Under the pieces are notes generated by a model, which worked only from the letters and a program-made list of their open reading frames with translations, was not told where the DNA came from and did not search any database. The position numbers were made by a program, and so were the translations under genes. 64,000 nt of DNA from positions 15,562,001 to 15,626,000 of the forward strand of contig NC_135667.1 in assembly GCF_964188315.1 (NCBI RefSeq). The letters run 5' to 3'. Position 1 is the first letter of the stretch. Each line of letters opens with the position of its first letter. Positions 13,809 to 58,106 of this stretch are shown here, one piece after another. The DNA is from Podarcis muralis. Its lineage: Eukaryota.

Positions 13809-13889
13809 ATTCAGTACAAAGGGAAGGCATGAGATCATTCAATGCATGCAACTGGATCCCCTGGGATAGATCTCTCCATTTCTGCAGCC

Positions 13890-29979: not shown

Positions 29980-30010
<31 letters not shown>

Positions 30011-32169: not shown

Positions 32170-32211
<42 letters not shown>

Positions 32212-34291: not shown

Positions 34292-34337
<46 letters not shown>

Positions 34338-36142
34338 CTCTTTGATAACACAGGCATCCTGACATGGATAAATCAAAGTGGGGAAATGGAAACGAGATGA
34401 TCTGAAGAGGGGTGGAACCCACAGCAATTTGCAATTTTGCTGTAAATTTTCATTGTTTATCTCATACTATAAATTCCTATTTATTCTATATTGAAAGTCA
34501 GACCTGATTACAAGTAGAAACCCCGATGAAACTACTTCTAACCTAGTAAAAGACATCTGCTCTTGGTCACAGGAGAAAACTGTGTCTGTTTGAGATCACT
34601 GGTTGTGTGCACCCATGTGTATTTGTAGTGTCATTTTTCAAAATAATTGCAAAGAAGGGGAAATGAATAAAGCATGAAAGAGGAATTGAGAGCTACAATG
34701 CAAAGATGATAAATAATGTTATTCTTGCCATTTAATGTCCATGTTGAAACGATGTGAAGAAATAATGTGAGGTGGAGGAAGGGCAAAGAGGGGCATTAAA
34801 AACTGCTTGAGGGTTGTTGGTTTTTTTACAACCAACTGAGGTATAAATTTTATGCAATAAAATAATATAAATATAGGAAGAGAGACCTGCGATTTCTGAG
34901 TCCTCCCTCCAATTGGTTAAGACACACTGAGAATGTAAATAATAAGTTTATGACAAACACGACCCAGCTAAAGAAACCTCTCTTCCTCCAGCCAACATTT
35001 CTTCATGAGGAGATAATCAGGCTCAAACAAATGTTCCCCTTTCCGAGGTCCTTACTTGCCCTTCCACGGAGAAGCTTGTCCGCCTGCGGCTGGCAGTCGA
35101 TGGCCTTCAGCACCTTGGCTGCCACCTCCACGGCACCATCCACATCATAGTGTCTGAGCAGCAGATGGCAGAGAGTCCAAGCACCACATTCCTGCAGCCA
35201 GTCCTGGGTGACCTGGAGATCGCCCATCGGAATGGAGAAATGGCAGAGTTCGCCCTTGAACTTTTTTAGCTCGGACTCATCTAAACTCTCCAGGGTGCAC
35301 GCCAGGAGACCATAGATGGCTCTAATATAGGTCAAATGGTGACCTGATAGCAGAAATGATTTCATTGGGAGCCCAGAATCCTTTTCAGAAGAGCTCCCAG
35401 GATGAACCTCAGGGGCCAGAGACTTCTCCAAGCACAGGGTACTGCAATTCCCCACCTGGATGCCTGAAAGGAAGCGGTTTTCTCTCCCAGAGTTCAAGTC
35501 ACCATAGATGTCAGCAGGTTTGTAGGCATCATTGGTGACGTAAGGGTTGTATCCTTCAAAGCCCAGAGCACCGAACAACGGGAAGTGTATTTGCCTCAGC
35601 TGGACTCTTGGCCTTTCAGAGTCATAAGTGCCAGAGAGGTATCCTTCAAGGTCTAGGGCATCCTCCGAGAAGATGTGTTTTTTTCTCCGCAACGCGCGTC
35701 TCCCCTTCCAAAAGGAAGTAACATCCCATTTGCCATCACAGACGCAATCCACAGGCTCCAGGGGATCCGCCGAGGGGGAGCAGACCTCCTCCCCCATTGC
35801 GCCCTGCCCCCCCACAGTCTCTGGGGCGTTCACGGAACGACTATAGACGGGGAGGATTTGGTGCCGCCGCGTCCACAGCATTCCACCGCCTGTGCTCAGA
35901 GATCTTCCAACGGCCCTGACCGACTCCTCTCTCCTTACCGGGCTGCTACTTCCTCTTCCCTCGGGCAGAGAAGCTCTGCGCCGATTTCTGTCCTCTGTCT
36001 GTGGGCCGCCCGCCCGCATTCTCGGTCGCGTGGCGTGTCGCGTCCGTAGAGAAGGAACCCCGCTTTCGACACCAGCGGACTCGACGGCGGGGACGGAGCC
36101 CGCGATTGCCGCGAGCACGTTCGAAGGGGCGTCTTCCTGCAT
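28433..36142 (-). CDS. Gene B: N-terminal extension - PYD - CxxC linker - FIIND - CARD protein, ~765 aa
   Basis: Exons 36142-35056, 33980-33907, 32860-32796, 31199-30976, 30360-30107, 29661-29533, 29371-29230, 29136-29107, 28725-28433; all GT-AG, phases compatible, 2298 nt. Confidence 0.86.
29230..29661 (-). CDS. Gene B FIIND UPA exons (29661-29533, 29371-29230)
   Basis: TVHEKEEK...KPLRIGSRF; ELELQY...ELIWEAFVRQ. Confidence 0.88.
30107..30360 (-). CDS. Gene B FIIND exon with autocleavage site (NPKF-SSRG)
   Basis: IGHF...LEKPSRV...NPKFSS...FHLYLLPNDSS. Confidence 0.92.
30976..31199 (-). CDS. Gene B FIIND ZU5 exon
   Basis: EAGSFQC...VAGPLLNIQA...FPHFLCL. Confidence 0.92.
31376..31989 (+). 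mobile_element. Intact 614-bp solo LTR
   Basis: TGTGGGATGT...AATAAA...ACATTTCCACA; exact 5-bp TSD gctgt. Confidence 0.88.
33553..33796. mobile_element. Tc1/mariner (Tigger-like) MITE; related copies near 22270, 42324-43455, 54563-54794
   Basis: TIR cagtggtacc/ggtaccactg flanked by TA. Confidence 0.8.
35056..36142 (-). CDS. Gene B exon 1: ~275-aa extension plus PYD
   Basis: 1087-nt open exon ending in LACTLESLDESELKKFKGEL...AVEVAAKVLKAIDC; phase-1 donor A|GTAAGG. Confidence 0.8.
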
Positions 36143-40459: not shown

Positions 40460-40740
40460 TCATTGCCCTTCCAGGTCTTTCACGAGATGTGGGTTTTGGG
40501 CCTTCAGTGCCTCATACAGCATATCCTTGCACCGGAGGTCCCAGCTTGGCAGAAGCCTGTAGAGCTCTCGCATCTTGTCTGGGTTAGTTTCCTTGGCAGT
40601 GATTTTTTGGTATTGCTCCTCACTGAGGACGGAGCCATGCAAACTATCCAGCACTGGTTCCACTGGGATGGTCCGTTGGATTAACTCCTTCCTGTGCCGC
40701 TCAATGAAGTGCACTTTGGAAGAGTTTGGAAACTGCGGCC
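40460..40740 (-). CDS. Gene C terminal CARD exon
   Basis: HFIERHRKELIQRTIPVEPVLDSLHGSVLSEEQYQKITAKETNPDKMRELY...KDLEGQ*. Confidence 0.93.
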
Positions 40741-43069
40741 CTACTGGGAAAGAGAGAAAGAGAGAATCTTGCTAAAGGTTCACACCACAGGCTTAAGACT
40801 GGTTCCCCAACTCATTCCTTCTTCCCCCATGACCTGGGAATTGTAGTTCCATGAGGGGAGGGATCATGAACAGAGCATTCCCAGTAGCTCACCTGCCTAA
40901 AATTCCCAGAATTCATTGGGCAAAGCCATAACTGTTGAAGAAGTATAAAACTGAAATAAGTGAGAGCTGTTGGAAGGGAGCCAAGGCTGGGGCCAGCCCT
41001 ACGATTAGGGAGAGTGAGGTGGCATCATAATTTGGGGTATCATAAACGACAGCAAATTGTCAGGCAATTAATTCATTACTATTTCACATAGTATTATATT
41101 TAGCTTTATCTTTTCTTACTTTAAAGCCCAGGAATTGATAGAGGGTGGGACTGAATGACACTTGGAACCCCTCCAAACTCTACCAATTCTATGCTTCTAC
41201 TATTGTTGTTATCATTACTGAACCCAGCTTTCTTCCACAGAGGCAATTTTCCTCACTATCCAAATTCCACTATCCCCATATGGCCTAGGACCCTCATACT
41301 TATGGGACCTCCTCTCCTGGTATGCCTCGCGGAGGACCTTACAGTCCACAAACAATAACACCTTGGAGGTCCCGGGCCTCAAGGAGGTTAGACTGGCCTT
41401 CTCGGCCCTGGCCCCAGCCTGGGGGAACGCTATGTCGCAAGAGACCAGGGCCTTGCGGCACTTGACATCTTTCTGCAGGGCCTGCAAGATGGAGTTGTTC
41501 CTCCAGGCCTTTGGTCTGGGCCCAGTCTGACCCCCCTCTTTTTACAAGACCCTGCATGTAAGTGACCTCTCTCACTCCTCCAGCCGGGTCATATAAGACC
41601 AGTACAAATAACTGGGCCTGGTGAGCACTTAATGTTCCCAACCCCTATAGTTATAATTCGTGGGTTGCCATCATTCTGATCTTAACTTGTTTTTAAGCTG
41701 TATTTTAATCGATTGTTTGACTTTATGTTTTAATGTACTATATACTTTGATGTTAGCCACCCTGAGCCCAGTCCTGGACAGGGAGGGCTGGATATAAATA
41801 AAATTGATGATGATGATGATGATGCCATGAAAACCTTATCCACAAGGCCTCTGTCCTTGGAAGAAGACAAAGTTATGGAACGTTGTCTCACAGATTTATG
41901 AATTATGCTTACAGTATCACTTAATCACAAATGACAACAAGAGCAAGTAACAGTTCATATTTTAGGAACTGCCACTCACTTTAAAATTGAGAAGCTCACA
42001 CTGTAAAACCTAGAGTGAGGAGATCAATGTCAGCAAAAGCTGTTCTGCTTGCCGGATGGAACAATTCTCTTAGTTTCCCTCTGAACTGTGTTCTGCGGAT
42101 TATTGTGACCCTCCAGAGAGGACTTGAGGGAGAGGGACAAGGAGGATATTGAGGAGAAAGTCCCATTGCATTAGTGGGAGCCCTTCTGATGCCATGTCAG
42201 GTTAGTTGCATCTGGGTAAAAAATGTTCTTAAAAACCTAGGTGAGTTGAAAGATCTTCATCTGGCGCCAAACAAAACAATAAGCCCAGACAACCTTGTCT
42301 AAGAAGGCTGTTGAATAAAGTTACAGTGGTACCTTGGTTCTCAAACTCAATCCGTTACGGAAGTCGGTTCCAAAACCAAAGCATTCCAAAACAAAAGGTG
42401 CACTTTCCCATAGAAAGCAATGCAAAATGGATTAATCCATCCCAGACTTTTAAAAACAAGCCCTAAAACAGCAATTTAACATGAATTTTACTATCTAACG
42501 AGATCATTGGTCAATTAAATGAAAGCAATAATCAATGTAAGGTAAGGTAAGGTAAGGTAAGGTAAGGTAAGGTAAGGTAAGGTAAGGTAAAGGGACCCCT
42601 GACCATTAGGTCCAGTCGTGACCGACTCTGGGGTTGCGGTGCTCATCTTGCTTTATTGGCCAAGGGAGCTGGCGTACAGTCATGTGGCCAGCATGACTAA
42701 GCCACTTCTGGCGCACCAGAGCAGCGCACGGAAACGCCGTTTACCTTCCCGCTGGAGCGGTACCTAATTATCTACTTGCACTTTGATGTGCTTTCGAACT
42801 GCTAGGTTGGCAGGAGCAGGGATCGGGTAATGGGAGCTCACCCCATTGCGGGGATTTGAACCGCTGACCTTCTGATCGGCAAGTCCAAGGCTCTGTGGTT
42901 TAACCCACAGTGCCACCCACGTCCCTAATAATCAATGTACTGTACTATAAAAAAAGTAAGACAGTATTGTAGATGATTAAAAAAATAATAATTCTTACCT
43001 GCACTGATGATAGCCATTGTTTGGATGGGGGGCTTTTATCCATTTCTGCAGTCACACAATCTATCTATC

Positions 43070-43124
<55 letters not shown>

Positions 43125-46100
43125 ATCTATCTATCTATCTATCTATATCTATCAGTAGCTGAATTGGGTTCCACACAGTCACAAAAACAAATTAACCGGA
43201 AAAGCCTCAAAAACCAAAATGCAAAATAAATAGCAGAAACAAAAGTGCCAAACTTAATCCATTCCGAAAGTCTGTTTAACTTCCAAAATGTTTGAAAACC
43301 TAGGCGCAGCTTCTGATTGGTGCAGGCGCCCCAGAAACAATAGCCGACAGCCGCATCAGATGTTCGGTTTCCGAAAATTGTTCGAAAACCAGAACATTTA
43401 CTTCCGGGTTTTTGGCATTTGAGAACCTAGGCATTTGAGAACCAAGGTACCACTGTACAAAAGTTATTTTTCATTTTTGTGCAGTGTATGTTCTACTGTA
43501 TCACCAGCACTTCCTATTGGGAGGAAGATAAGATACAAGTACAATGAAAGAAACAACTAAAACCTGCTGACCTTGTGCTGGGTGTATAATAGGAGAAGCC
43601 ATCTGCCCTGAAGTTAACTCATCTGAAAATCAAGAAGAAAAAGTCAGTCAAAGAGGGAATGTGACCTGTGGTCCTTTTCCATCCTGCCTCCCAAGATATG
43701 ACTCAACCTCACGATCATCCCTTGTTCAAAACTCACTTTTTTTTAAATGGGCCTTCCAAACAACTTCAGTCGTGCCCTTCTTCATCAGGTAGAAGTTGAA
43801 CTTCTCTTGCATTTGTTCAGCAGACAGTTCTACATACTGCTGCAGTTTCTCTGCATCCAGGTATTGAAAATGCAGTTCCTGTGGGAAAGAATGAAACCTC
43901 TGTAGGTGTGAATCTGGTTTGGCCCAACCCACCATTCCAAGGGAGTCAGATTAAAGGGTGAAGAAGGATCCTCGTTGAATTTCTCCCATTCTCAGACTTC
44001 ACAGTCTTGGTTCTGCCCCATCAAAAAACCACCATCATCTTCATGTCTCACCTCAGGATTCACTGTGACATCCTCTGGAGTACTAAGAGAGACCTGAGAG
44101 CCAATCATCAGAGGTTTCAGGGTCACAGGGGGTTTCTCTATTCTCTTTGAATTTACTTCACGCTTATCGACCGCCTGGGAAGGGTAAAGAAAGTCACTTT
44201 TGACATACGCAGAGAGGGAACAAAATTTTTGGAAGACTAGATGCCTACAACATTCTTGGCATTGTAGCACCAGGTAATGCAGGAATGGGGAACCTGGTGT
44301 CCTCCAGATGTTGTTGGACTCATATCCTTCCCAACAAGCATGGGCCAAGGATGATGGGTTTCATAGTTCAAGAACATCTGCAGAGACACAGATTCTCCAT
44401 ATGCAATATAAAGAAAATTAAACCACTATGACAATAGAAACTAAAATGTGGAGTGGAGATTTCCTGGCCTCATGAGGAACTGAAGGAAGCCAAGGCTCTT
44501 GGACTGGGCAGCCTGGACTATAAAGTGGCCAAGAGGTACCATGAATCCTGGGTCCACCTGCATCTTCTCTTGATGAGACCATGCAGGAAACCACAGAAGC
44601 CATGAAACTTCATTATTTGAATGAAGCATAAGAAGACATTTTAAGGAAAAGTTTAAATTGAGAAGGCAATATGATAGTGTGCTTTATCTCCCATGTGCCA
44701 ACACTGCAAATCAGGAAGAATGTTTTTCCTCAGGAGTTATCTGAGAAAGCTCGTTACTACCAAGCTGATTCCTTAATGAACGAAGCAGTATTTGTTCATT
44801 GCTAAATACGTTTACTCTGAAGGAAGTGTTACTGATTTCAATGAAGGCTTCCAGGAGAATGTGCTTAGGATTTCACAAGTAAGTGACGACCCGTTTGTTT
44901 AGAGAACCAGACAGGCTGTGTAACAAATGAAAAGGGCATATTTCAATATTGGAAGAATCACTTTAAACCAACAGTGCCGGTGGGAAGCTAAGTAACCCAG
45001 CATTGGGCAACTTGTTAATCTTCTCTCTACTGGCATGTTGATGTTGGGTAGAAGAGATCAAGTCCAACAATTGTGCATAGTCGGGGTTAATATGATCAAG
45101 CAAATGATCCAGACAATCGGGAATACCAGAGATGGAGGTTCCTGGTTACCTTTATTATTGAAGGGTCATTGGGCAGAACGTACAGGTGAAATGTTGGCGT
45201 TTCCAGCTGAAGCCTATGATAGAGCAGTACGACAGTGTTGATCTTTTGCTTAAACCACTTTTTGAAAACGACTCCTAGGGAAGAGAACTTGGGGTTTTCC
45301 AACACAGCATGGTGAGGCTCCACTCTGTCTGGCTTCTCCAGCCTCATCTCCCCTTCAACAAAATGTGCAATGTAGACATGGGAACTGTCATCACCTGAAA
45401 AGACAAGCATGTTAGAAGTGGGAAAGTGACAAAAATATCATCACTTAACCCTCCCTATTTCATGCAAGTATTCATTTTCTCATTGTACTGTAATTTAAGA
45501 GGTTTATAACATCATTTCACAGGACAATATGCTTGCATGGCAGCTTAAAACAGAATGCAAATCACAGAAAATAATAAAACAGCACAGTTGGAACATTTTG
45601 AAAAATTGAAACAAATAACAAAAGTCTGGTATGCCAGCACTCCTGACCTCTAGAACCCACCCATAGCATTCTGGAAACATCAATGGACATTTAGGACTCC
45701 TCCTATTATGGTTATAATGCTGGAAACTTCTCCCCTGACATACCTTCAAGGCACAAGAAGTGAGGGATGCAAATGGATGCCACAGCCTCTGCTGCATCCA
45801 CCTTAAAGTTGAGCAGAGGGCCAGCGACATGCAACTCCTCAGTGTTCTGTTCTGCCAGGAGCTTCGGCCATGAATCAAAGTAGTATGTTAAGGTCACAGC
45901 TTCTTTCACTTCACATATGAGACCAGTATCATCGCACTGGAAGGAGCCAGCCTCAGTCGAGCGCACTCTGAATGGCACAAAGAGAAAGACGAAAAGGAAA
46001 AGGGGACCCCACTCGGTGTACCTTGGGATCTCAAATTTCAGCAGCTCCCTGAGCAATGCCAAAATTCAGCACCTTACCCATGCCTCTCGCACTCCATTCT

Positions 46101-49100
46101 GAATAATAGTTGTGGCATCTCCTGCAGAGACCCTCAGGCTCCACAGCTGAACTGGCCGTGCTCCCCTAAATTTGCCTTTGAATAGCTGACATTAGGGTTG
46201 TTGAACCAAACTGTGGGAATGTTGAGGGTGGCAAGAGAGGGTATATTGATTATTAATATCCTAACTTGCCCTAGCAAGTTTCTTTATTTAGCAAAGTGCA
46301 TTCTCCTTCTTACACAGCAGAAACTGGCTGCAGACTCGTGTGAGTCTCTTAAGACTATAGGCAATTCAATCTGGCTTGTCCAGATTGAGATGTATTCTAT
46401 TATTCCTGGTAAGACCCCTTTAGGTAAAGGTAAAGGACCCCTGACAGTTAAGTCCAGTCAAAGACGACTCTGGGGTTGCGGTGTTCATCTTGCTTTACTG
46501 GCCGAGAGAGCCGGCATTTGTCCGCAGACAGTTTTTCTGGGTCATGTGGCCAGCATGACTAAACCGCTTTTGGCAAAACCAGAGCGGCGCACGGAAATGC
46601 CATTTACTTTCCCACCAGAGCGGTACCTATTTATCCACTTGCACTTTGACCTGCTAGGTTGGCTGATTAAAGACCCCTTTAATCCCTCCTAAAAGAATAA
46701 AGACACTGCAGTCTTATTCATAAGTGCTAAAAAGTCGTTTACTTACATTCAAAGAGAACACGGTGTGAATCCTGAAGGCAGGCTTAAGGCTTAAAGTTAC
46801 AAGTATGTACAATGTGCATTTACCCCATATTGGGGAATAACCCAGTGCTGGCTGAGAGCCAGCAGTGCAGTCCAAGCTGGAAGCAGGTCAAAGGTGAAAG
46901 GTGAAAGAGAGAGGACGGGTGCATGACTTGGCCTCTTATCAGGTCTGGTAAGGTCACAACCACCTGCTAGTCACATGCAAGAGGAAGGATGCTCCAGCCA
47001 AGTGGACCCAACATTCCCCTGCATGTCCACTCTAGCAAAACAGGCAATGTTGTACTTGACTGCTCTGGTGGATTACATCCCACAAAAACTAGTAGAGAAG
47101 AACAAGATAAATTGATTTTGGGGCAATGGCAATAATGCCAAGGAAGGGACAGGGGACAAGAGGAGCTGAAATGACTCCCTTGCTTCAAGAAACTCATTGG
47201 GTTATCTTGGGCCAGTCACTGCCTCTTAGCCTAAAGTACGGTACCTCACAGAGTTGTGAGGGGAAAATGGAGAGGGGAAAACCATGCATGCCAACTTGAA
47301 CTCCTTGGGAGAAAGGTGGAATATTTTTAAGGAAGAGAAACAACAATTCCTCCAAAAATCCAAACTCCATATTTTTCACCTTTCTCAAACTCTGCATCCT
47401 TCTTTTGATGCTACCCCAACCTGAAAAGGGGGCGGGATATATACAACTGGAAGTTAGCAACAGCAGTGCTTCAATGTAATGTTTTTTTCCAGCTCTGCTC
47501 CATGGAACCAAGGAATTCCTCAGTGAAGACATCAGGAATGGTGGTTAAGCTTCCTTCAGAGAGAATTTGTCCACCACAACTGACCGTTCACTGCAATATG
47601 CAGATCACAGATGTACTCTGCGTAAGTTTTACCGAGAACCACCATATGTGGTGACTGTGAGACCCACAGAAACCAGATGTGCTCTGTTGGACAATTCAAA
47701 GTAGAAACCACTCCCTGAGGGGAGAATGTTTCAAAAGGTCTGAGAGAGATAGAGATGATAGAGATAGAGACAGAGATAGAGATAGAGAGATAGCGAGAGA
47801 GAGAGAGATCACACACCTGTAAGCTTCATGGCCCCTTTCTGAGTCCCAAACCACCTCTGGTTTTATTTTTTCTGGAATATCCTATAATGAAACCATAATC
47901 ATTCATGTAGATGCCAGAATCCATATCCCATCTGGAAACGGGGCATTATTGTCTGTTCCTAAGACCCTTGAGACCACACCCTTCTAAAACAGATGTGACA
48001 CAGGAAGATTCCACACTAAACCGGAATCACAGCATTAGAGTTCTGCAGTAGTGCAATGATCTTTTTAGATGGAAAGTGTTTAAGCACTGGAAAATATGGG
48101 ACGATTTGAAATGTGACATCAACTGGACCGCCCGTAAGGTAAGAGCGAGGCAAGATGATTCCCGACTAAATGGAAACACAGTGTGCTAAGTGTGCATTGC
48201 AATGACTCTCACCATGAGTTATTAGCACAAGGAAAAAGCTGTTTAGATGCAGCCTTATTTCCTGCTACCAGACTCTAGCTTTGAATAACAAATATGTAAA
48301 TAATTACCTAAGATGGGATAGTTGCTAACCTTAGGGGACTAGAAATTTAAATTCAGTGGCTTCACGTTAAAAATATCAACGTGTACCCTATTCCTGTGGG
48401 TGGGAAATGCACATCAAGACAGGTCAGTCCCTTACCTCACTGGGACACCGGCCACACGGCACACTTTCCCCAGAACCTGCTGAGTTCTCCATCTTCATGC
48501 TTCCTTCCCTCTGTAAATATGAGCAAAGCAAGATGATTCCCAACTAAATGTAAGCACAGCAAGGCAAGAAGATTCCACATGAAATTGGAATCACATAATT
48601 ACAATTGCGCAGAAATGCAATGCTTTGTTTTTTATTATTTTTTTAAGCACTAGGAGCAACCTGTTTGGAAACAGCCTTGTGGCTCAATACCAGCAATTAG
48701 TGCCGACTAGCAAGATGATTAATTAATGTACAAAAATACCTAAAGAGGGACAAGGGCTTTTTACAGTGCACAAGAAATTCAAATTCAGAACCTTTCTGTT
48801 AGAAGTACCAATATAGGCTTCATTATCATGGGTGGTCAATGCAAATGAGAAGAATGCCCACCCTTTACCTCACTGAGACACCAGTTGCTTGTGATAATCT
48901 CCCCAGAACCTACTGGGTTCTCCATCTTCATGCTTCTTTGTTCCCCTTCATATAAGGGGGATTCTGAGTGTGGTGCTGTAAAAGAATGACAATTATTTGC
49001 CTGCTATGACTTTTGGAAGTTGGTTTGCAGGGTGAACACATAAAAATACAGTATTTCTTAAGAACCCATAGGATGTGAAGAGTAGCGCCTTGTGTGAGGC

Positions 49101-52100
49101 CAAAATTCCCTCACCTCTCTCTTTCCATACTACTCAATTCACTATGTTATAGTTGCAAAGCCCTGCAGTACCCTCTAGGAACCAGTCTCACTGCCCAAAA
49201 TTCGCCTCTAGTGTGGATTGTGGCTAATGCCATGTTTCTGTCTCAGGGTTGGCCCAATACATTTTTCTACCTGAGGCAAACCAGAAAATACCCCCTATGC
49301 AACCTGATTAAGACACTGAACAGAAACCAGGTGATCACTACTACCCACTATGATCTTAGACACATCCTCTTAATCCTTAAAAAAAAAAAAAGATTTCTTC
49401 AGTGTTGTTGAGAGCACATTGAGCAGCAGGTTGGCCTTGGTGACTTCCAAAGTCTGTTCCAACCCCAAAATGCTGTTATTCCATTCAGAGCAAAAGCTCA
49501 GCCTTGGTCAACCTCGTGGTAGGGCCATCTCATCTCTCCTACTGACCTTGTTCTGGATGTGGGCCTGAAAACTTCAGCTCCTCTGAAAGAGACCAGGAAA
49601 GAGGCAGTCAGAGAGGGCATGTAGATGGGATGTCCTTTCCATCCTGCCTCCTGAGCTATGGCCCAACCTTGTGGTCCTCCCTCAGCCAAAGCTCACCTTG
49701 CCTCACATGGGCCTCCCAGACCAGTTCATTCGTGCTCCTCTCTATCAGGTTGAAGTTGAGCTTGTCTTGCGTGAATTCAGCACTGATTTCGAGGAACTGC
49801 TCCTCCATGTATTGAAGCTCCAGTTCCTGTGAAAAAGCTCTGTAGGTGTGAATGTGACTTACCGGTAACTGATGGACATTTTATCTCCAAATGCTGAGAA
49901 GAAGCTGAACTGAACTAGCAGACTTTACTCTGGGCATAATCACACTCAGACTCTGGGTTTAGGAGATGCAAACAGCCATGGTTGTTTTTGCATCTCAGCA
50001 GGAGAGACACCAAAAATGTCTCCTTTACCAAGATGAGGATGAAGAAAAAGGAAGTAGTAAATGACATATCAGTGTAGCACCTGAGAGGACGTCAGCACAG
50101 GTTAGGTCAGACAGGACAATCTAGGAAACCAGGAAGTCTCTGTCCTCCTCTGTCTCCCTTTCCCCATGCAGACATATCTGCCTCAAGTGCAAGCTGATGC
50201 ATCACACCACTTCCGATGTAATTCCCCCACCTCCCCACCATTCAAAAGGGGGTAAACAAAAGACTGAAGGGATCCTGGTTTGCTTCCTCCCATTGTTAAA
50301 AACCTCACAGCCTTGGTTCCCTCCAGGCAACCCCTGTAATCATCTCTGGTCTCCTACCTCAGGGCAGACTGTGACGCCATCTAAATTTTGGATGAAGACG
50401 CGAGAGCCAATCTTCAGAGGCTTGAGTGCTCCAGAGGGTTTTGGCAGTCTCCTTGAAGGCCACATTTCCTCAAATTTATAGACATTCTGGGAACGGCAAA
50501 CATGGTCACTTTGGAGACATGAAAGGAAGACACCAAATCTATGGAACACTGGGTCCCTTTGCTTACTCCTGGATCTCGGATAGAGAGAGATCCAAAAGAG
50601 ATGTCTCCTCTCCCAAGGATGGCATGGAGAAGAAGGAAGTAGAGGTCAGCAACCCAAAGAATTTCACTCTAGCCTGAAGGAAGGTCAGCAAAGGTTAAAG
50701 GACAGTCTAGGAAAACTTAGAGAGTCCTCTCTCTAACTACTTTCACCCATGCAGCTACATCAGCCTTCAGCACATACTGAGCTGCATCCCAGCACTTCCA
50801 ACAGAACAGGCATTCAATAGTATCATTGTTTTCATAATCAAAATCTGACTAATAATCTAGCCTGCCCGGAACACAAATCAGAGTTGGAGATTCTTAGTTA
50901 CCTTTCTTAGGGAAGAGTCATTGGGTAGGAGGTACAGGTGGAATTTTGGGACACCAGAGATTTCCAGCTCCTGATAGAGCAGTGCCATGGCGTGGACCAT
51001 TATCTTTCGCTTAAACAATGCCTTTTTGAAGATGACCCCACAGGTATAGAAGCGGGGGGCTTTCAATACAGCATGATACGGCTGCACGCGATCTGGCTTC
51101 TTCAGTCTCATCTTCCCTTCAACAAAATGTGCTATGTAGACATGGGAACTGTCTTTCCCTGAAAAGAAACACAAGGGAAACATGGGCAAACAGTTCACTA
51201 TACTGCAGACTTGAGTTTGGGTGAGAAAACTCACCCCTTCTCCCTTCCTGTTTAATGCAAGTCAAGCCACTGGCCTGATCCAGCAGACCCATTCTATGTT
51301 CTTAAGTGTTTATTTTGTTATCATAATCTAGAGGTGTTTTTAAAAGCCTGCATTACAGAGCAATGTCCTCCCAAAGCAAGTTACAGGACAAAATACAGTA
51401 TACAGTAAGTACAAAGTATAGTAAGTCAAAGAAAAAAGCAGAATTCTAGCAAAAAGACAGAATTCTTGCAAAATCAAAAGAAGCCACAAAAGGCAGATAA
51501 AGCATTGTGATCCACTGAACCAGCCCATAGCATTATTCAGCCAATAAGGAATGTACATGATAGACAAAAGGAAGAATCTTAAACAGGAATGGATATTACC
51601 ACTCTATTCTTGGAAGCTTTTCTTCCTACCATACCTGTGAGACACAAGAAGTGAGGGAAGTGAACTTCTGCCACAGCTTCTTCTGCATCCGCTTGGATGT
51701 TGAGCAAAGGACCAGCAACAGCCAGCTCTATCATTTGCCATTCGTGCAGGTGTTGAGTCCATGAATCAAAGTGGTATGTTATGGTCACAGCTCCCCTTAC
51801 CTTAAATATAAGATCAGTACAACAGCAAAGGAAGGAGCCAGCTTCAGTGAAGCAAAATCTGAAGGCGAGAAAGACAAAAGGTGTCGAAAGAGATTGATGC
51901 ATCTTCCTCTACTGTTACGGCTGATACTCTTATAAGCAATTTGTGGGTCGTGTCAAATGTGCTCTCTTGATAACAATGATCATTAGCAGTATTTCAGTCC
52001 AGCATTGACTGGAATTTTGGTACTTAACTTTTGGCTCTTCATCTGATACTGTGCTGTGGCATGGGCGAGGGGCAGGATTTATGTTAGGGGGTACATGCTT

Positions 52101-53856
52101 TATGTCCACTACTCATCTTCCACAGCGATGTGCACCCACAGGGGCAAGCAGAGTATGCCTAGAGAGCATCACAATGTGGGAGCATCACCATATCCATATG
52201 CAATGCAGAAAACATTCTCTGATGGAAGTACTACTCGCCTGTAAGTTTCATGGCTCCTTTGTGAATCCCAAACTTTCTCTGGTCTTATCTTTCCTGGAAG
52301 CTCCTATAACAAAGAATAAAGGGTCCGAATTGATACCATATTCCTCCTCCTATCTGAAAATAAGAACACCCACTATGACCACATCAAGGATCCCTTCTTG
52401 AGCTCCACTCCACAGCTCCACATTGCTAAAAGCTCTTTATACCTGCTGCATTCTGTATTCATTTTTAGTATAGTAATTAGACCTGTGCTGAATTCTGAAA
52501 TACTGTGTGAACTGCTGATCCATTAAAAAAAACAACTTTAAAAGAAGATATAATCTTCCAAAATATCTCATTATGGTGATTATAGCATGGCTGCAACCCA
52601 AACATCCATTAACATTTCATCCCCAAGTACTGATGAGGGGGAAGAAGGGTACACTGTGGGTTGGCACTTGGTGTCCATCCATACCAGATTCTCCCACTCT
52701 CCTTTCACCCAGAGAATTATTTCTGGAGACAACTGTGGACATGGCAATATTGGAAAGTACTGTACCACAATGCATGCAAATGAAGAAACATTTAAGCAGG
52801 AGGATTGAAATGTAACAAACAGCTGGACCCCCCACAAAATATGAGTGAGATTCCACACTAAACTAGAAACACAATGTGATAAGTGCCCTTTGTCCACTTG
52901 CCATGGTTTATTAGCACATGGAGCCCCCTGTTTTGATGCAGCCAGTACAACCCTTACCTCGCTGGGACACTGGATGCACATGACGCTTTCTCCAGGATCT
53001 TCAGAATGCTCCATTTTCTGGTTCCTCGTTTCCTTTCTGAATAGGAGGGATTCAGACTGCAGCACTGACTGGTCAGAAACCTGGACTTTATTTTTAAACC
53101 AATATGACTGTTGTGAAAATGAAGAAAGGTGCAAAAAATGACCTTGAGGAATAAGAATGACGTGAAGTCAAATCCACCCAGTACTGCAAATAGCAGGATC
53201 CGAACAGAAGCCGGACGTACCATTTCTAAACATTCCAGGAACCGACAACAAGCTTGTTCTCCCCTTTCCAGGATTATACTTAGCAATTTTTTGATTTTCT
53301 CTTTAGAATCTTTCTCCATTTTGAAAACATTCTTGTATTCTTGTAGTGTGATGACAGAGCAAGAGTGTAGGGTGTGCAAAACGAAGTCTAGGTCCTCTTC
53401 AAGAATTTCAATCAACTGTTCTCTTCCCTTGCAGATCATCTCATCACTAAAGAATGCGTATCTTTTCAACGACCTGTGGCAGAAACAGAAGCAGGGGAAG
53501 AACTGGAACCTGGTTAGGTGGCCAACTTGCAGCCAGTGGACCATCGGTAGCTCTCAGCTGCACACCCTGGGGCCCACCAAGACTTGGGGAACCTTGCCTT
53601 CTTTTCTTAGCCTTAAGCTGTGCAATTTCACCATCAATTTCACCTGGTGTGCCAGCAGGTGAAGAGGGAGCTAAAAGCGTACGTGTGAAATGAGCGGAGG
53701 GGAAAGTGGTGTGTGCAAGAGAGAGTGGGAATGAGAATTGTGAAGGTGGGTGTGTCTGTGCACATATCTGAGCAAGTGTGCAGCCCCCAACACACTACTC
53801 ACCTGCACACACAACCCTCAGGGATAAAAAGATTGCCCTGCTGTCCCCTATTCTAG

Positions 53857-53915
<59 letters not shown>

Positions 53916-56900
53916 ATTTATACCCTGTCCATCTGGCTGGGTTTCCCCAGCCACTCTGGGCAGCTCCCAAGAGAATATTAAAAACATGATAAAACATCAA
54001 ACATTAAAAACTTCCCTAAACAGGGCTGCCTTCAGATGTCTTCTAAAAGTCAGATAGTTGTTTATTTCCTTCCTTGACATCTGATGGGAATCTATTAAAA
54101 AGACTCCCTCGAATATCCTCCCAGCAACCCCAGTCAGTTCTTATCTTTAGTCCTTATCTTAGCATTATTATCTTTATATGGGCAGGATGGGGGAGGCTGA
54201 GAAACAGTCCACACAGTGGTTTCGTTGTAGAGGCAAGATCTGACTCGGACTTCCCTCTTTCACAGCTCACTATATTCCAGCGGCTCTGCACCTTTATGGT
54301 TGTGGAGTGAGGCTGGCTTGAAAAGTATCTGGCAGCCTGACAGCTTCAGCAGAAAATATGCACTTTGGTTTTACTGCCCAACGGTTGACTTAGAAAGTCA
54401 TCTGTGGGCAGGAAAGGGAAAGGTTCAACATGGTGATTTGAAAAATATTCTTTCTTCCAAGCAGCCTTTTCCTTTAAAAAGCACACACGAAATTAGTAAA
54501 TTGGCGCTAAAGCATTTATTTGTTTTAAGCAGAAGAGCTTGCTAAATTACTTATAATGTTTACAGTGGTACCTCGGGTTAAGTACTTAATTCGTTCCGGA
54601 GGTCCGTTCTTAACCTGAAACTGTTCTTAACCTGAAGGACCACTTGAGCTAATGGGGCCTCCTGCTGCCGCCGTGCAATTTCTGTTCTCATCCTGAAGCA
54701 AAGTTCTTAATCCGAGGTACTATTTCTGGGTTAGCAGAGTCTGTAACCTGAAGCGTATGTAACCTGAAGTGTATATAACCTTGAGGTACCACTGTGTGTG
54801 TGTGTGTATATATTTCAGATATATACGTTTCACTGATTTTACAATCATTTTGACATTTAAAAAATTTACTTCCTTCCCCTTCTTCATGCAGTTCCTTAAA
54901 TTTATTTTTAATATTTTCTGCATATCCAGATTAACTTAACTTACTCATTTATTTATCTTCTTTATATATATACTCTTATGTAGCTGCAGGTTGTTACAAT
55001 AATCCTGCCAGTGTTTTTATCTGTTTACAATTTATCTGTAAATATTCAATGAACCATTTCCATTCTTTTATATAAAAAAGTTTGTTATCTTGGTTTCTTA
55101 CTCTTCCGGTAAGTTTCTCCATTTCTGCATATTCCATAAGTCTTTGTATCCATTCTTCCTTTGCTTGGACTTCTTCTTCTTTCCATTTTTGGGCAAGTAA
55201 CATTCTTGTCATATAATGTTTAAAATTGAAGTGTTTTGCATTGAGAGTGTAGTTTGCTGTAGTGTTAACTGAGAGGGGAAAACACATTGCTAAAATGGTG
55301 GCTTCAGTCACTTAAGTAAAGTGTAGAAATTACCCTTTAGTGGCTCTTTCTGATGAAAGCAGTTCCTCCAGACCTTGAATAATTTTTGAAGACAATACTA
55401 CAGCTGTCCGATGCCTTGAAACATGCTTTTCAGGGGGTTGCTCTGCTGTTAGATATATTGAGAAAGTGAGTACACATAAACAGTTTTAGTTAATCAAACC
55501 CATGGCCTAGCTGAAGTTCTGCCAGAACCTTCAGGGCCAGGAGGCATATGTAAGCAGAGGGGAAGGGATAATATTGTTCTGAAGTGATGGCATTGATTTT
55601 ATAAAATCATTGTGAAACTTGAAGAGATACTGATTTCAGAGTCTTCCCTCCGATTTTGTCCAGAATACATATTCAGAATGCTGCACAGATTTGAGACACA
55701 CCCAAAGCCCTTCCAAGAAGCTTCCTTTACACCCAGCCCCACTCCTAGAAGAAGACCATCAGACTCAGCCAATGTTCTCCCTTCCAAGTTCCTTACCTTT
55801 CCCGATGAGACGAAAGAGCCATTCTGGCAAGGGCTCACATTCAATGGCCTTCAGCACCTCTGACACCACCTCCACAGAATAATCCTCAGCACAGTATGTA
55901 AGCAGCAATTCTGTGAGCTCCCAAAGATTTGCTTCCTCCAGCAACCCCTTGGGGATACTGACATAGCCTTCCTTGAAGGGGAACACGCTGAGTTTATCCT
56001 TGAACTTCTTCAGATCTGACTCCTTCAAGGTTTTCAGGGTGACCAGCAGGCATAGATGTGTAATCCTTACTGTTGGAATTATTGGTGTTAGTAGCAGTAT
56101 TGAACAGAAAAAACCCAGCCTACATTCCCCTTCCCCTTCTCTTCCTGTTGGAAAACCTTGAATAGGTAGCACTAAGTGGGAAAGGGCCGTGGATCAGTGG
56201 TAGATCACATGCATACAAAGGATCCCAGGTTGAATCCCTGGAATCTCCAGATAGGGCTGGGAAATATTCCTGCCTAAAACCTTGGAATGAGCTGGACCAA
56301 CTGGTCCAATGTGCCCTAAGGCAGCTTTCCATCTTTCTATGATTTCCAATGATTCCAGCAATTCAGCCTGACTCAGAAGACAGAAAAAACTCCAAGGGGG
56401 TTAGGAAGGCCTGAAGACTCTCTTAATTTACACGCCTCTTCTTAGCTATTTGCAGGCTTCAAACATGAAGGAAAGAAGACTGCATTCCACAAGGAAAAAT
56501 CTGAACCCCAAGTCCAAAGGACCACAAGAAATTCATGTAAACTGTTTCTTTGCTGTTCTCTGCATCCTAAGATGAAGATACCGTATTTGCAATTTATTAA
56601 GCATTGGCAAGGGACACAGGTGGCGCTGTGGGTTAAACCACAGAGCCCAGGACTTGCCGATCAGAAGGTCAGTCGTTCGAATCCTCACGACGGGGTGAGC
56701 TCCCATTGCACAGTCCCAGCTCCTGCCAACCTAGCCGTTCAAAAGCACGTCAAAGTGCAAGTAGATAAATAGGTACCGCTCTGGCGGGAAGGTAAATGGC
56801 GTTTCCGTACACTGCTCTGGTTTGTGAGAAGCGGCTTAGTCATGCTGGCCACATGATCCGGAAGCTGTACCCCGGCTCCCTCGGCCAATAAAGCGAGATG

Positions 56901-58106
56901 AGCGCCGCAACCCCAGAATCGGCCACAACTGGACCTAATGGTCAGGGGTCCCTTTACCTTTACCTTTAAGCATTGGCAATCCGATTGTTGAAAGCTGCTG
57001 AGAATTGCTGCCATCAGCCAAAAGCTTTCTATAGAAAACAGTGCATGTACTAAAAATATCTCAGCTTGATATTTTTTGTTATTTATTGCTGCACTTTGGG
57101 GCTAGGCTAATCTAGGAGCAGGGAGTCTCAAGCCCTGTGGCCAAATGGGCTCCTCTAGACCCCTCCTTCAAGCCCTTGGAATGCTCCCCAGGCCACACCC
57201 CTCACTGACCCCGCCTGGAAACCCTCCTGGGGTGTCTCTGCCTTCCTGAAATGGGGCCTTGAGCTCCGATCAGGGCTGGCGCACTCATGAGGCAAGGTGA
57301 GGCATGATCCACAGGGGCAGCAGATCCCAATGCAGATCGTTATTCCCCACCTTGTTCCTGATGTTCCTTCTTCCCTGGTGGGGAGCCATTTTTCTTCTTT
57401 CGCCTCAGGCGCTAAACTCTCTTGGGGCAGCCCTAGCTCCGATAATGCTTCTTTCTAGTCTAGATGGAGGGCAGAGGGATGTGTGAAAACACTAGCCCAC
57501 TTTACACAGGTAACAGTGACACCCATCATTCTGCTCCCTTTCACTGCTGGTCTTGCCTTTGCTGGAAAAGTTGCCCCACCCCTGGGCGACTACAGCCATG
57601 GGAAGGAGCTGTGCTGTCAGTACAAACAGAACCCCGAGGTGTCACCACCACCAGCCAGATGGATCCACCCCTCTCCGGAGATCCTTACTTAGCCTGATGA
57701 AAACAAAGAGAGAGCCCACCGGGGGCTTGTAGTCCATCGCCTGCAGCACCAGCGCCGTCACCTCCACGGCATAAGCCTCGCCATAGTACTGGATTAATAG
57801 ATCCCTGAGCTGCCGAGCATCGGCTTCCCTCAGCAACCTTTTGGGGATTCTTCCGACGCCCTCCTTGACCGGGAATCTGAGCAGTTCGCCCTTGAATTTC
57901 CTCCAGTCCTCGTCCCGCAAGTCCAGCAAGGTGCCCAGAAGGAGGAGAGGGGCGCAGTGAATCGCCCAAGGCTGCGGCTCCAGAAAGAGCGAGGGACCCG
58001 CTTTGGGCAGCCGCGTCGCGGGGAAAAGGCTGCCCTCGTCGTCCCCCTTTCTTGGGGGAGCTGTGAAGGAGAGGGCCGGGAGATTGAGGACGATCTTCTT
58101 CGACAT
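40460..58106 (-). CDS. Gene C: PYD - PYD - CARD - CxxC - FIIND1 (F-Y) - CxxC - FIIND2 (F-S) - CARD protein, up to ~1096 aa
   Basis: Exons 58106-57689, 56069-55797, [53670-53598 tentative], 53473-53221, 53107-52958, 52303-52239, 51858-51635, 51158-50902, 50486-50358, 49826-49697, 49582-49547, 48945-48869, 48510-48436, 47881-47817, 45967-45744, 45394-45150, 44174-44052, 43878-43737, 43622-43572, 40740-40460. The chain 53473-40460 is phase-consistent; the PYD2-to-CARD link is uncertain. Confidence 0.7.
42586..42925 (-). mobile_element. Sauria-type SINE with (GTAAG)n tail (42537-42590), nested in a Tigger-like element
   Basis: Reverse complement of the SINE consensus seen elsewhere in the window. 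Confidence 0.85.
43060..43150. repeat. (TATC)n microsatellite
   Basis: Directly visible. Confidence 0.95.
43737..44174 (-). CDS. Gene C FIIND2 UPA exons (44174-44052, 43878-43737)
   Basis: AVDKREV...KPLMIGSQ; ELHFQY...EVVWKAHLKK. Confidence 0.86.
45150..45394 (-). CDS. Gene C FIIND2 exon with canonical site (ENPKF-SSLG)
   Basis: IAHF...LEKPDRVEPHHAVLENPKFSSLGV...FHLYVLPND. Confidence 0.92.
45744..45967 (-). CDS. Gene C FIIND2 ZU5 exon
   Basis: EAGSFQC...VAGPLLNFK...IPHFLCL. Confidence 0.92.
46212..47084 (-). mobile_element. Solo LTR (inverted) with nested Sauria SINE fragment (46421-46665)
   Basis: tgtgggaatg...acatcccaca; near-TSD caaac/aaaac. Confidence 0.7.
48436..48945 (-). CDS. Gene C duplicated inter-FIIND linker exons (48945-48869, 48510-48436)
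   Basis: GEQRSMKMENPVGSGEIITSNWCLSE and REGSMKMENSAGSGESVPCGRCPSE; phases 1-0 and 0-0. Confidence 0.7.
49697..50486 (-). CDS. Gene C FIIND1 UPA exons (50486-50358, 49826-49697)
   Basis: NVYKFEE...KPLKIGSR; ELELQYMEEQF...ELVWEAHVRQ. Confidence 0.86.
50902..51158 (-). CDS. Gene C FIIND1 exon with non-canonical site (APRF-YTCG)
   Basis: IAHF...LKKPDRV...HAVLKAPRFYTCGV...FHLYLLPNDSS. Confidence 0.92.
51635..51858 (-). CDS. Gene C FIIND1 ZU5 exon
   Basis: EAGSFLC...VAGPLLNIQA...FPHFLCL. Confidence 0.92.
53221..53473 (-). CDS. Gene C internal CARD exon (different type from the terminal CARD)
   Basis: EMICKGREQLIEILEEDLDFVLHTLHSCSVITLQEYKNV...KIKKLLSIILERGEQACCRFLECL fits the CARD pattern. Confidence 0.85.
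53857..53915. repeat. (CAA)n microsatellite
   Basis: Directly visible; tail of a LINE-like fragment. Confidence 0.95.
54800..55230 (-). mobile_element. L1 3' fragment
   Basis: MLLAQKWK...EEWIQRLMEYAEMEKLTGRVR. Confidence 0.7.
55797..56069 (-). CDS. Gene C second PYD exon (phase 1-1)
   Basis: LLVTLKTLKESDLKKFKDKLSVFPFKEGYVSIPKG...; TACTAAC branch point, ccaacag acceptor, G|GTAAGG donor; 273 nt. Confidence 0.85.
56610..56968 (+). mobile_element. Sauria-type SINE
   Basis: Full-length; flanked by repeated ttaagcattggcaa. Confidence 0.88.
57689..58106 (-). CDS. Gene C exon 1: short extension plus first PYD
   Basis: LLLGTLLDLRDEDWRKFKGELLRFPVKEGVGRIPKRLL...YAVEVTALVL; phase-1 donor A|GTAAGG. 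Confidence 0.82.

What the first reader, a model, noticed from the sequence alone, without database searches (positions are those of the whole stretch)
40460..53473. A single reading frame with two complete FIINDs in tandem (CARD-FIIND-FIIND-CARD)
Seen: after FIIND1 and its hinge exon (49547) there is no CARD exon or stop; 600 bp later a phase-1 linker exon (48945) leads in frame through two more small exons into a second full ZU5-UPA and the terminal CARD. Seventeen consecutive exons have compatible phases. Known: NLRP1 and CARD8 have one FIIND, and their repression needs a second, full-length FIIND in the DPP9 ternary complex. Inferred: FIIND1 may supply that repressing FIIND in cis (a built-in brake) or act as a degradation barrier or decoy. 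I do not know of a described protein with this layout. Weak point: the 48945 acceptor is a weaker AAG.
Basis: partly seen in the sequence, partly recalled or inferred. Interest (0 to 1): 0.93.

Follow-up and report, generated by a model that had tools for sequence, protein, structure and literature searches.

The report
Lizard inflammasome sensor with two FIINDs
A wall-lizard immune-sensor gene of the NLRP1/CARD8 kind really does encode one protein with two complete self-cleaving "FIIND" modules in a row; the first has lost its cutting residues but is still conserved, a layout present in gene catalogues but not found in our search of the literature.

Summary
Confirmed. The minus strand of 40460-58106 carries one 20-exon gene. 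Its 1120-aa product is identical to RefSeq XP_077774049.1, "uncharacterized protein LOC114582834" of Podarcis muralis. The layout is PYD-PYD-CARD-FIIND1-linker-FIIND2-CARD.

RNA contigs from three runs in two studies show every splice from the N-terminal CARD exon through FIIND1 into the exons leading to FIIND2. This includes the key junction 49547->48975.

Both FIINDs are complete by Pfam. FIIND1 folds like the NLRP1 and CARD8 FIINDs (TM 0.85 and 0.79). FIIND1 has lost catalytic residues: E->K and S->Y here, and also H->C in Lacerta agilis. FIIND2 keeps H/E/F|S. All 20 exons are syntenic and open in L. agilis. FIIND1 is under purifying selection (dN/dS 0.36, P=0.004).

Gene models with the same tight tandem layout exist in Pogona, Anolis and Astyanax. 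In each, the first FIIND lacks an intact triad.

Function is inferred only. It is probably a CARD8-like "functional degradation" sensor in which the uncleavable FIIND1 acts as a regulatory module. I found no paper on tandem FIINDs. The scan's other notes on this are from this same window.

The parts
57689..58106 (-). E1: start codon (58106) and first PYD
   Evidence: ORF with GT donor; Pfam PYRIN x2 on aa 1-352; identical to RefSeq P0193
55797..56069 (-). E2: second PYD. The alternative start ATG at 55822 (other frame) is used by annotated isoform X4, which skips E3
55334..55445 (-). E3: short linker exon, phase 1 in and phase 2 out
   Evidence: RNA contigs run from 53474 into a sequence that matches 55335-55364 with 2 mismatches
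53221..53473 (-). E4: N-terminal CARD, truncated (Pfam profile positions 2-72 of 85)
   Evidence: Pfam; joint 53221->53107 in 3 runs
52958..53107 (-). E5 (L1): linker exon with a CxxCPSE motif, predicted disordered
   Evidence: RNA joints; pLDDT below 50
52239..52303 (-). E6 (X1): first strand of FIIND1; followed by a GC-AG intron
   Evidence: RNA joints 52958->52303 and 52239->51858
51635..51858 (-). E7: FIIND1 ZU5, first part
   Evidence: Pfam PF13553 90 bits on the ORF; RNA joints
50902..51158 (-). E8: FIIND1 ZU5 end and UPA start. H509 at 51127-51129; K518 (in place of the catalytic Glu) at 51100-51102; F535-Y536 (in place of F|S) at 51046-51051
50358..50486 (-). E9: FIIND1 UPA
   Evidence: RNA joints in X5 and X11; Pfam UPA-FIIND
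49697..49826 (-). E10: last UPA exon of FIIND1
   Evidence: RNA joints
49547..49582 (-). E11: hinge exon 1 (36 nt, phase 1 in and out)
   Evidence: joints 49697->49582 and 49547->48975 in all 3 contig runs
48869..48975 (-). E12 (L2): linker exon, paralogue of L1. Its acceptor is placed so that phase 1 reads the homologous frame
   Evidence: same exon length and AG/GT sites in L. agilis
48436..48510 (-). E13 (L3): second copy of the linker exon (CxxCPSE)
47817..47881 (-). E14 (X2): first strand of FIIND2
   Evidence: joint 48436->47881; homology to X1
45744..45967 (-). E15: FIIND2 ZU5, first part
   Evidence: Pfam; RefSeq model
45150..45394 (-). E16: FIIND2 ZU5 end and UPA start. H850 at 45363-45365; E859 at 45336-45338; F876|S877 at 45282-45287 (predicted autocleavage site)
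44052..44174 (-). E17: FIIND2 UPA
43737..43878 (-). E18: last UPA exon of FIIND2
43572..43622 (-). E19: hinge exon 2
   Evidence: pLDDT below 50
40460..40743 (-). E20: C-terminal CARD and stop codon. NAGNAG acceptor (40743 or 40740) accounts for the 1120-aa and one of the two annotated 1119-aa isoforms
   Evidence: Pfam CARD 73-74 bits

Best explanation
This is one expressed, conserved gene, Podarcis muralis LOC114582834. It encodes a NACHT-less member of the NLRP1/CARD8 family with the layout PYD-PYD-CARD-FIIND1-FIIND2-CARD.

Shown:
- One spliced reading frame runs through both FIINDs.
- Both are complete ZU5-UPA folds.
- FIIND2 keeps the autoprocessing triad and the F|S site directly ahead of UPA-CARD.
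- FIIND1 has lost the nucleophile Ser (Tyr) and the catalytic Glu (Lys), yet evolves under purifying selection.
- It is flanked by roughly 50-aa and 70-aa segments that are predicted disordered.

Inferred mechanism:
- FIIND2 cuts itself at F876|S877.
- The protein then works like CARD8. Cleavage or ubiquitylation of the N-terminal part leads to proteasomal 'functional degradation', which stops at the FIIND2 break and frees UPA2-CARD to nucleate an inflammasome.
- FIIND1 cannot cut itself, so it stays a covalent part of the N-terminal fragment. That is the condition for degradation started upstream of it to reach the FIIND2 break.
- FIIND1 is retained for a non-catalytic role.

My estimates for that role:
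- About 35%: a built-in 'site-A-only' FIIND, a natural S1213A analogue, that together with DPP9 captures stray UPA2-CARD and raises the firing threshold.
- About 25%: a bait for effectors.
- About 25%: no specific role beyond being a stable spacer.
- About 15%: something else.

FIIND1 and FIIND2 derive from different paralogue lineages. The gene therefore looks like a fusion within the tandem cluster, not a recent internal duplication.
For: Single frame and RNA joints. Identity to RefSeq isoform X1, and all four annotated isoforms keep both FIINDs. The P. lilfordi model has the same junction. In L. agilis all 20 exons are syntenic with canonical sites and an open frame.

Domain completeness. 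FIIND1 AF2 model has pLDDT 88 and pTM 0.86. Foldseek matches are 7crw_A (rat NLRP1 FIIND in the DPP9 complex) at TM 0.85 and 7jn7_B (CARD8) at TM 0.79.

Catalytic positions, mapped on human H1186/E1195/S1213: FIIND1 is H-K-F-Y in P. muralis, H-N-F-Y in P. lilfordi and C-G-F-Y in L. agilis. FIIND2 is H-E-F-S. Of 43 other FIIND units, 40 are H-E-F-S.

Selection: dN/dS is 0.36 for FIIND1 (16 synonymous and 22 non-synonymous changes, P=0.0036) and 0.44 for FIIND2. The linkers are at 0.73-0.89. Polymorphisms in FIIND1 exons seen in the RNA contigs are 7 synonymous to 5 non-synonymous.

Disordered tethers. Distinct paralogue origin: tree; the AU test rejects FIIND1+FIIND2 as one clade at p=7e-13. 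No CARD or PYD vestige lies between the two FIINDs.

Convergence: in the tight tandem models of Pogona (H-R-F-S), Anolis sagrei (H-E-P-C) and Astyanax (C-E-F-I), the first FIIND never has an intact triad, while the second has H-E-F-S in the two lizard lineages; Astyanax's second is D-E-F-S, keeping the F|S site.

[quoted passage not shown] The tripwire and functional-degradation model for CARD8 is in PMC10249858.
Against: - There are no protein data. Autocleavage of FIIND2, non-cleavage of FIIND1, DPP9 binding and inflammasome formation are all inferred from sequence.
- The RNA evidence is assembled contigs, not single molecules. The one raw-read run laid had no reads on the stretch. Rare isoforms that skip FIIND1 (53221->48510 is also in frame) or that end early cannot be excluded.
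They rest on the RefSeq model and on homology.
- AF2 gives no confident FIIND1-FIIND2 arrangement (pTM 0.40).
- Mapping the human DPP9-interface residues onto both FIINDs was uninformative.
- A dN/dS of 0.36 could reflect selection merely against misfolding.
- If activation proceeds by degradation from the far N-terminus, FIIND1 of the same molecule is destroyed first. Any brake would then have to act in trans.
- The tandem models in other lineages are automatic predictions, with no RNA checked here.
Confidence: 0.55

Rival explanations
1. Passive passenger. Two neighbouring paralogues fused: the upstream one lost its CARD exon, the downstream one lost its N-terminal exons. FIIND1 is simply carried along. 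It is kept folded and uncleaved so that it does not break the protein, and it has no binding or regulatory function of its own.
For: FIIND1 and FIIND2 come from different paralogue lineages. The catalytic positions drift freely, with the Glu position reading K, N and G in three species. AF2 shows beads on a string. UPA1 scores lower than UPA2 against Pfam, 58.8 versus 86.3 bits. Conjoined-looking models are common in this cluster, such as P0124 and P0128.
Against: FIIND1 is as constrained as the functional FIIND2, with dN/dS 0.36 versus 0.44. The whole cassette could be skipped in frame (53221->48510), yet no such joint is seen and no annotated isoform skips it. The L2 acceptor is placed so that the homologous frame is kept, and it is conserved in Lacerta. 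The same layout with a defective first FIIND recurs in Pogona, Anolis and Astyanax.
Confidence: 0.25
2. Integrated bait. FIIND1 is a decoy copy of the FIIND. It attracts pathogen factors, or host regulators such as DPP8/9, that normally target FIINDs. An attack on FIIND1 or its flanking disordered linkers then triggers degradation and release of UPA2-CARD.
For: Integrated-decoy and tripwire logic is established for NLRP1 and CARD8 (PMC10249858, PMC7857732). The first FIIND sits on a faster-evolving branch than the second in the tandem lineages with distinct copies: the lacertid FIIND1 stem is 0.31, Pogona 0.58 versus 0.23, and Astyanax 1.15 versus 0.37. The linkers before each FIIND are disordered and nearly neutral, with dN/dS 0.73-0.89.
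Against: No sign of positive selection within FIIND1 between Podarcis and Lacerta (dN/dS 0.36). No pathogen factor is known for lizards. Nothing here tests binding.
Confidence: 0.17
3. Two separate genes (CARD-FIIND1 and FIIND2-CARD), with the joint transcript being occasional read-through; or the duplication is an assembly artefact.
For: L2 and L3 contain in-frame ATGs (MKMEN...). An older annotation split the locus into fragments. Read-through-like models exist nearby.
Against: After hinge 1 there is no stop, no terminal exon and no CARD. RNA depth is zero at 49100-49499, within the hinge-to-L2 intron, in three runs. The 49547->48975 joint is in every contig run, at the same depth as its neighbours. 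Four RefSeq isoforms, the older 567-aa model, P. lilfordi and L. agilis all share the layout. The two copies are only 66-74% identical at DNA level.
Confidence: 0.03

Closest known systems
Human CARD8 (disordered N-terminus - FIIND - CARD)
   Same: No NACHT or LRR. FIIND2 followed directly by a CARD. The H/E/S triad and the F|S site are present. A disordered stretch precedes the FIIND. The fold matches 7jn7_B.
   Different: A second, catalytically dead FIIND and three death-fold domains (PYD, PYD, truncated CARD) lie upstream. In phmmer bit scores FIIND2 is closer to NLRP1 than to CARD8 (165 and 146.5 versus 122), while FIIND1 scores highest against CARD8.
NLRP1 (PYD-NACHT-LRR-FIIND-CARD) and its DPP9 ternary complex
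   Same: FIIND-CARD effector end and an N-terminal PYD. FIIND1 superposes on the intact 'site A' FIIND of rat NLRP1 in 7crw_A (TM 0.85).
   Different: No NACHT or LRR. Two FIINDs in one chain. In NLRP1 the second FIIND in the checkpoint complex comes from another molecule.
NLRP1-S1213A / CARD8-S297A laboratory mutants
   Same: FIIND1 is a natural FIIND without the nucleophile Ser. S1213A binds only site A and represses the free C-terminal fragment. S297A abolishes signalling.
   Different: The mutants are whole sensors that cannot signal. Here the dead FIIND is fused upstream of a live one. FIIND1 also lacks the catalytic Glu.
PIDD1 (LRR-ZU5-ZU5-UPA-DD, two autocleavage sites). From my own knowledge, not tested here
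   Same: A ZU5/UPA protein with two sites of the HFS type in one chain, ahead of a death-fold domain.
   Different: PIDD1 has two ZU5 domains and one UPA, and both sites are active, giving alternative fragments. Here there are two full ZU5-UPA units and only the second site is intact.
Predicted tandem-FIIND proteins of other vertebrates: Pogona XP_078233239.1, Anolis sagrei XP_067325632.1, Astyanax XP_049321714.1
   Same: The layout is [PYD]-FIIND-FIIND-CARD with short linkers (no PYD hit in Astyanax). The first FIIND has a defective triad.
   Different: On the tree they are not orthologous to the lacertid gene. They have no N-terminal CARD. No RNA or protein evidence was checked here.

Membership tests
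FIIND-CARD inflammasome sensors (NLRP1/CARD8 family) | ZU5-UPA FIIND fold | tested here: met
   Both units give full-length hits to PF13553 and PF23679. The FIIND1 AF2 model matches 7crw_A at TM 0.85 and 7jn7_B at TM 0.79. FIIND2 matches NLRP1 chains by phmmer at E=2e-47.
FIIND-CARD inflammasome sensors (NLRP1/CARD8 family) | Autoprocessing residues (His, Glu, Ser after Phe; human H1186/E1195/S1213) | tested here: met
   FIIND2 has H850, E859 and F876|S877. FIIND1 does not meet this: H509, K518, F535-Y536.
FIIND-CARD inflammasome sensors (NLRP1/CARD8 family) | CARD directly after the UPA, making a UPA-CARD effector fragment | tested here: met
   A CARD of 73 bits at aa 1038-1120 follows a 22-aa hinge after UPA2. 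No CARD follows UPA1.
FIIND-CARD inflammasome sensors (NLRP1/CARD8 family) | Actual autoproteolysis, DPP8/9 binding, caspase-1 activation | not testable with these tools
   Needs expression and biochemical assays.
NLRP1 proper | NACHT and LRR domains upstream of the FIIND | tested here: not met
   Pfam on the near-identical isoform P0160 finds only PYRIN, CARD, FIIND and UPA-FIIND.
PIDD1-like double-autocleavage proteins | Two active HFS-type sites in one chain | tested here: not met
   Only the FIIND2 site is intact. The domain order is ZU5-UPA-ZU5-UPA, not ZU5-ZU5-UPA.

The most novel reading that the evidence does not exclude
Tandem-FIIND sensors are a recurrent, so far undescribed class of vertebrate inflammasome sensor. 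In this class an upstream, catalytically dead FIIND serves as a self-contained checkpoint: a genetically hard-wired 'site A' partner for DPP9-type sequestration of the released UPA-CARD, or a bait. The class evolved at least four times, in lacertids, agamids, anoles and characid fish. Each time the first FIIND lost autoprocessing residues; the second keeps the F|S site in all four and the full triad in the three lizard lineages.
Probability: 0.3. Interest if true: 0.85.

Novelty: new variant of a known kind. Interest (0 to 1): 0.72.

Why it matters
In NLRP1 and CARD8 biology, the checkpoint that holds back the freed UPA-CARD fragment needs a second, intact FIIND from another molecule. The only uncleavable FIINDs studied so far are laboratory Ser-to-Ala mutants.

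This gene is a natural experiment. An uncleavable FIIND that is still under constraint is fused in cis to a live FIIND-CARD. The same solution appears in several vertebrate lineages.

If FIIND1 turns out to be a brake or a bait, it would show how firing thresholds of degradation-triggered sensors can be encoded within one polypeptide. It would also give a simple system for separating site-A from site-B functions.

For genome annotation, it shows that some 'double' FIIND models in these tandem clusters are real genes and not merged neighbours.

Tried and rejected
1. RNA uses 48975.

2. My first guesses were wrong. I had a small exon at 46121-46078 before ZU5a-2, an L1 start at 53036 or 53056, and a CARD exon end at 53185. 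The real exons are X2 at 47881-47817, L1 from 53107, and a CARD exon end at 53221.

3. tblastn for CARD or PYD remnants in 45967-49547 found nothing better than E=0.017.

4. The raw-read run X21 had no reads on the stretch, so there are no read-level junction counts.

5. I mapped the human NLRP1 residues of interfaces I, II and III onto FIIND1 and FIIND2 through phmmer alignments. Both units differ from human at most positions. FIIND2 keeps the K-P-P of interface IIIb, while FIIND1 has K-P-S. This does not discriminate between the hypotheses.

6. AF2 of residues 353-1120 gave pTM 0.40, so no confident inter-FIIND geometry.

7. A single ancient origin for all squamate first FIINDs is rejected by the AU test (p=2e-8). 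Gene conversion between the two units could mimic that result, and I named the groups after seeing the tree.

8. Literature searches for tandem, two, dual, second or duplicated FIIND, and for FIIND together with lizards, found no description.

9. A Zootoca orthologue could not be established. XP_034990590.1 starts inside the linker region.
Full report
**What is there**

ORF pieces on the minus strand between 40.4 and 53.5 kb hit CARD, FIIND (PF13553) and UPA-FIIND (PF23679). There are two full sets of FIIND exons. A self-comparison shows that only the exons are alike, at 66-74% DNA identity, and the introns are not. The two units are therefore old and diverged, not an assembly duplication. The window has no N runs.

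**Gene model**

I used homologues found with HMMER, direct reading of the splice sites and RNA joints. Together these give a 20-exon gene from the ATG at 58106 to the stop at 40460-40462.
- The ORF is 3363 nt with no internal stop.
- Every intron is GT-AG, except one GC-AG intron after exon X1, which the RNA confirms.
- The 1120-aa product is identical to RefSeq XP_077774049.1, [quoted passage not shown]. This also identifies the genome.
- Isoform X2 (1119 aa) uses a NAGNAG acceptor alternative at 40743/40740; X3 is also 1119 aa.
- Isoform X4 (861 aa) skips E3 and starts at an ATG in another frame of E2.
- All four annotated isoforms keep both FIINDs.

Domain order is PYD, PYD, truncated CARD, FIIND1 (aa 403-682), FIIND2 (aa 744-1026), CARD.

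**RNA evidence**

Several RNA runs of the same species hold the FIIND1 exon 50881-51174. I laid Logan contigs of three of them, from two studies, on 47500-53499. They show all ten joints from the N-terminal CARD exon to exon X2, each with CT..AC ends on the plus strand.
- The decisive joint is hinge exon 1 to linker exon L2, 49547->48975. It appears in all three runs at the same depth as its neighbours.
- One 2233-nt contig runs from L1 through all of FIIND1, the hinge and L2, and onward.
- Depth is zero at 49100-49499.
- No joint skips the FIIND1 cassette, although 53221->48510 would also be in frame.

Limits: these are contigs, not molecules. The raw-read run gave nothing.

One contig piece is odd. 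It maps to FIIND1 exon E8 with no mismatch, at the point where the paralogous FIIND2 exon is expected. I could not resolve this.

The L2 acceptor is the strong ttcttttacag| at 48975, not the AAG at 48945. L1, L2 and L3 are paralogous linker exons.
- L1 and L3 start in phase 0.
- L2's acceptor is placed so that the phase-1 hinge exon reads L2 in the homologous frame. Phase 0 would reach a stop within 16 codons.
- This acceptor and the exon length are the same in Lacerta agilis.

**Conservation**

- P. lilfordi CAI5791025.1 (1060 aa) has the same layout and the same junction, at about 97% identity.
- The L. agilis locus (L001) holds all 20 exons in order, with canonical splice sites and an open frame. 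The RefSeq model there is truncated to 466 aa.

| Region (P. muralis vs L. agilis) | dN/dS |
|---|---|
| FIIND1 | 0.36 (16 syn, 22 non-syn; P=0.0036 against neutrality) |
| FIIND2 | 0.44 |
| Linkers | 0.73-0.89 |
| C-terminal CARD | 1.48 |

Differences between the RNA contigs and the reference in FIIND1 exons are 7 synonymous to 5 non-synonymous.

**FIIND1 is complete but catalytically dead**

- The AF2 model of FIIND1 has pLDDT 88 and pTM 0.86.
- It superposes on the intact FIIND of rat NLRP1 in the DPP9 complex (7crw_A, TM 0.85) and on CARD8 (7jn7_B, TM 0.79).

The catalytic residues of human NLRP1 are H1186, E1195 and S1213 (10.1101/2020.08.14.246132). I mapped them through phmmer alignments and MAFFT.

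| Unit | His / Glu / Phe / Ser positions |
|---|---|
| FIIND2 (P. muralis) | H850 / E859 / F876 / S877 |
| FIIND1 (P. muralis) | H509 / K518 / F535 / Y536 |
| FIIND1 (P. lilfordi) | H / N / F / Y |
| FIIND1 (L. agilis) | C / G / F / Y |

The catalytic positions drift while the domain as a whole is constrained.

**Origin**

On an ML tree of 53 FIIND units, lacertid FIIND1 forms its own old lineage. FIIND2 nests deep inside a lacertid-specific expansion. Forcing FIIND1 and FIIND2 into one clade is rejected (p=7e-13). No CARD or PYD remnant lies between the units. The gene looks like a fusion of two cluster paralogues, not a recent internal duplication.

**Other tandem FIINDs**

HMMER and Pfam find predicted proteins with two closely spaced FIINDs in Pogona vitticeps, Anolis sagrei (two assemblies) and Astyanax mexicanus. 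In the Pogona and Anolis loci the exons are collinear, with no extra CARD between the units.
- The tree places each pair within its own lineage. A single clade of all squamate first FIINDs is rejected (p=2e-8).
- Two caveats apply: gene conversion could mimic this, and I chose the groups after seeing the tree.
- The first FIIND never has the intact H-E-F-S set (0 of 6 models; it reads H-R-F-S, H-E-P-C and C-E-F-I outside lacertids).
- By comparison, 5 of 6 second FIINDs and 40 of 43 other units are intact.
- Looser "double" models (P. muralis 1529 aa, Rhineura 1419 aa, Alosa, Epinephelus) have other domains between the FIINDs. They may be merged neighbours.

**How it probably works**

AF2 of residues 353-1120 predicts two folded FIINDs and a CARD. 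They are joined by low-confidence segments: L1 (about 50 aa), hinge1+L2+L3 (about 70 aa) and hinge 2 (about 22 aa). The pTM is 0.40, so the picture is beads on a string.

By analogy with CARD8 (PMC10249858), I infer the following.
1. FIIND2 autoprocesses.
2. Damage to the N-terminal part leads to its degradation.
3. UPA2-CARD is released.
4. An uncleaved FIIND1 is required for degradation that starts upstream of it to reach the FIIND2 break. This explains why loss of its catalytic residues is tolerated or even favoured.

Why FIIND1 is kept is open. The S1213A experiments show that an uncleavable FIIND can sit only at site A, and that it represses free C-terminal fragments together with DPP9. 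A bait role or a passive spacer role remain live alternatives.

**Novelty**

I found no paper describing tandem FIIND proteins. The sequences exist only as uncharacterized database models. I rate this a new variant of a known kind.

The scan's other notes on FIINDs are all from this same window. One of them already noted the Ser-to-Tyr change.

Noticed in passing
window 40460-40743 versus L001 25181-25480: The C-terminal CARD has dN/dS 1.48 between P. muralis and L. agilis (4.7 synonymous, 24.3 non-synonymous changes). L. agilis has a 1-nt deletion just before the stop, which lengthens the tail by 23 aa. This could be positive selection or gene conversion among cluster paralogues.
   Followed up: partly
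window 52237-52238 (donor after exon X1): P. muralis has a GC-AG intron here, confirmed by RNA joints. The L. agilis orthologue has a GT donor at the same place.
   Followed up: yes
window 50954 (codon G567 in FIIND1): An in-frame 3-nt deletion is seen in RNA contigs of two runs. P. lilfordi and L. agilis also lack this Gly, so P. muralis is polymorphic for it.
   Followed up: partly
window 52958-53107, 48869-48975, 48436-48510: There are three paralogous linker exons. L1 and L3 end in a conserved C-x-x-C-P-S-E motif. L2 has only W-C-L-S-E. Two CxxC motifs flanking FIIND1 could form a metal site; this was not examined.
   Followed up: no
window 51064-51153 (read laying, X11 record 7): Part of a 2233-nt RNA contig maps here with no mismatch, at the transcript position where the FIIND2 exon (12 differences in 90 nt) is expected. 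It could be a reporting quirk, a contig chimera or a conversion allele.
   Followed up: partly
window 55797-56069 and 55334-55445: Annotated isoform X4 skips E3 and then starts at ATG 55822 in another frame of the PYD exon. This yields a PYD-less CARD-FIIND-FIIND-CARD protein. RNA contigs here support the E3-E4 joint; the skip itself was not seen.
   Followed up: partly
window about 1777-2193, 10973-11287, 13848-19766, 28385-35368: The window holds further cluster members: two PYD exons and two single-FIIND paralogues (PYD/CARD-FIIND-CARD types). Protein identity to this gene's relatives is mostly 30-65%.
   Followed up: no
database proteins P0124 (P. muralis XP_077774242.1, 1529 aa), P0128 (P. 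raffonei, 761 aa), P0002 (Rhineura, 1419 aa): In these gene models a FIIND is followed by PYD or CARD domains of what looks like the next gene, and then by another FIIND-CARD. They suggest conjoined transcripts or merged models in these clusters.
   Followed up: partly
database proteins P0014, P0052, P0180, P0048, P0042: Unusual FIIND fusions appear in predicted proteins: FIIND with a URGCP-type GTPase in Pogona, Lerista and Tiliqua; FIIND-caspase-FIIND-CARD in Alosa; and a ubiquitin-like domain with two partial FIIND hits in P0042.
   Followed up: no
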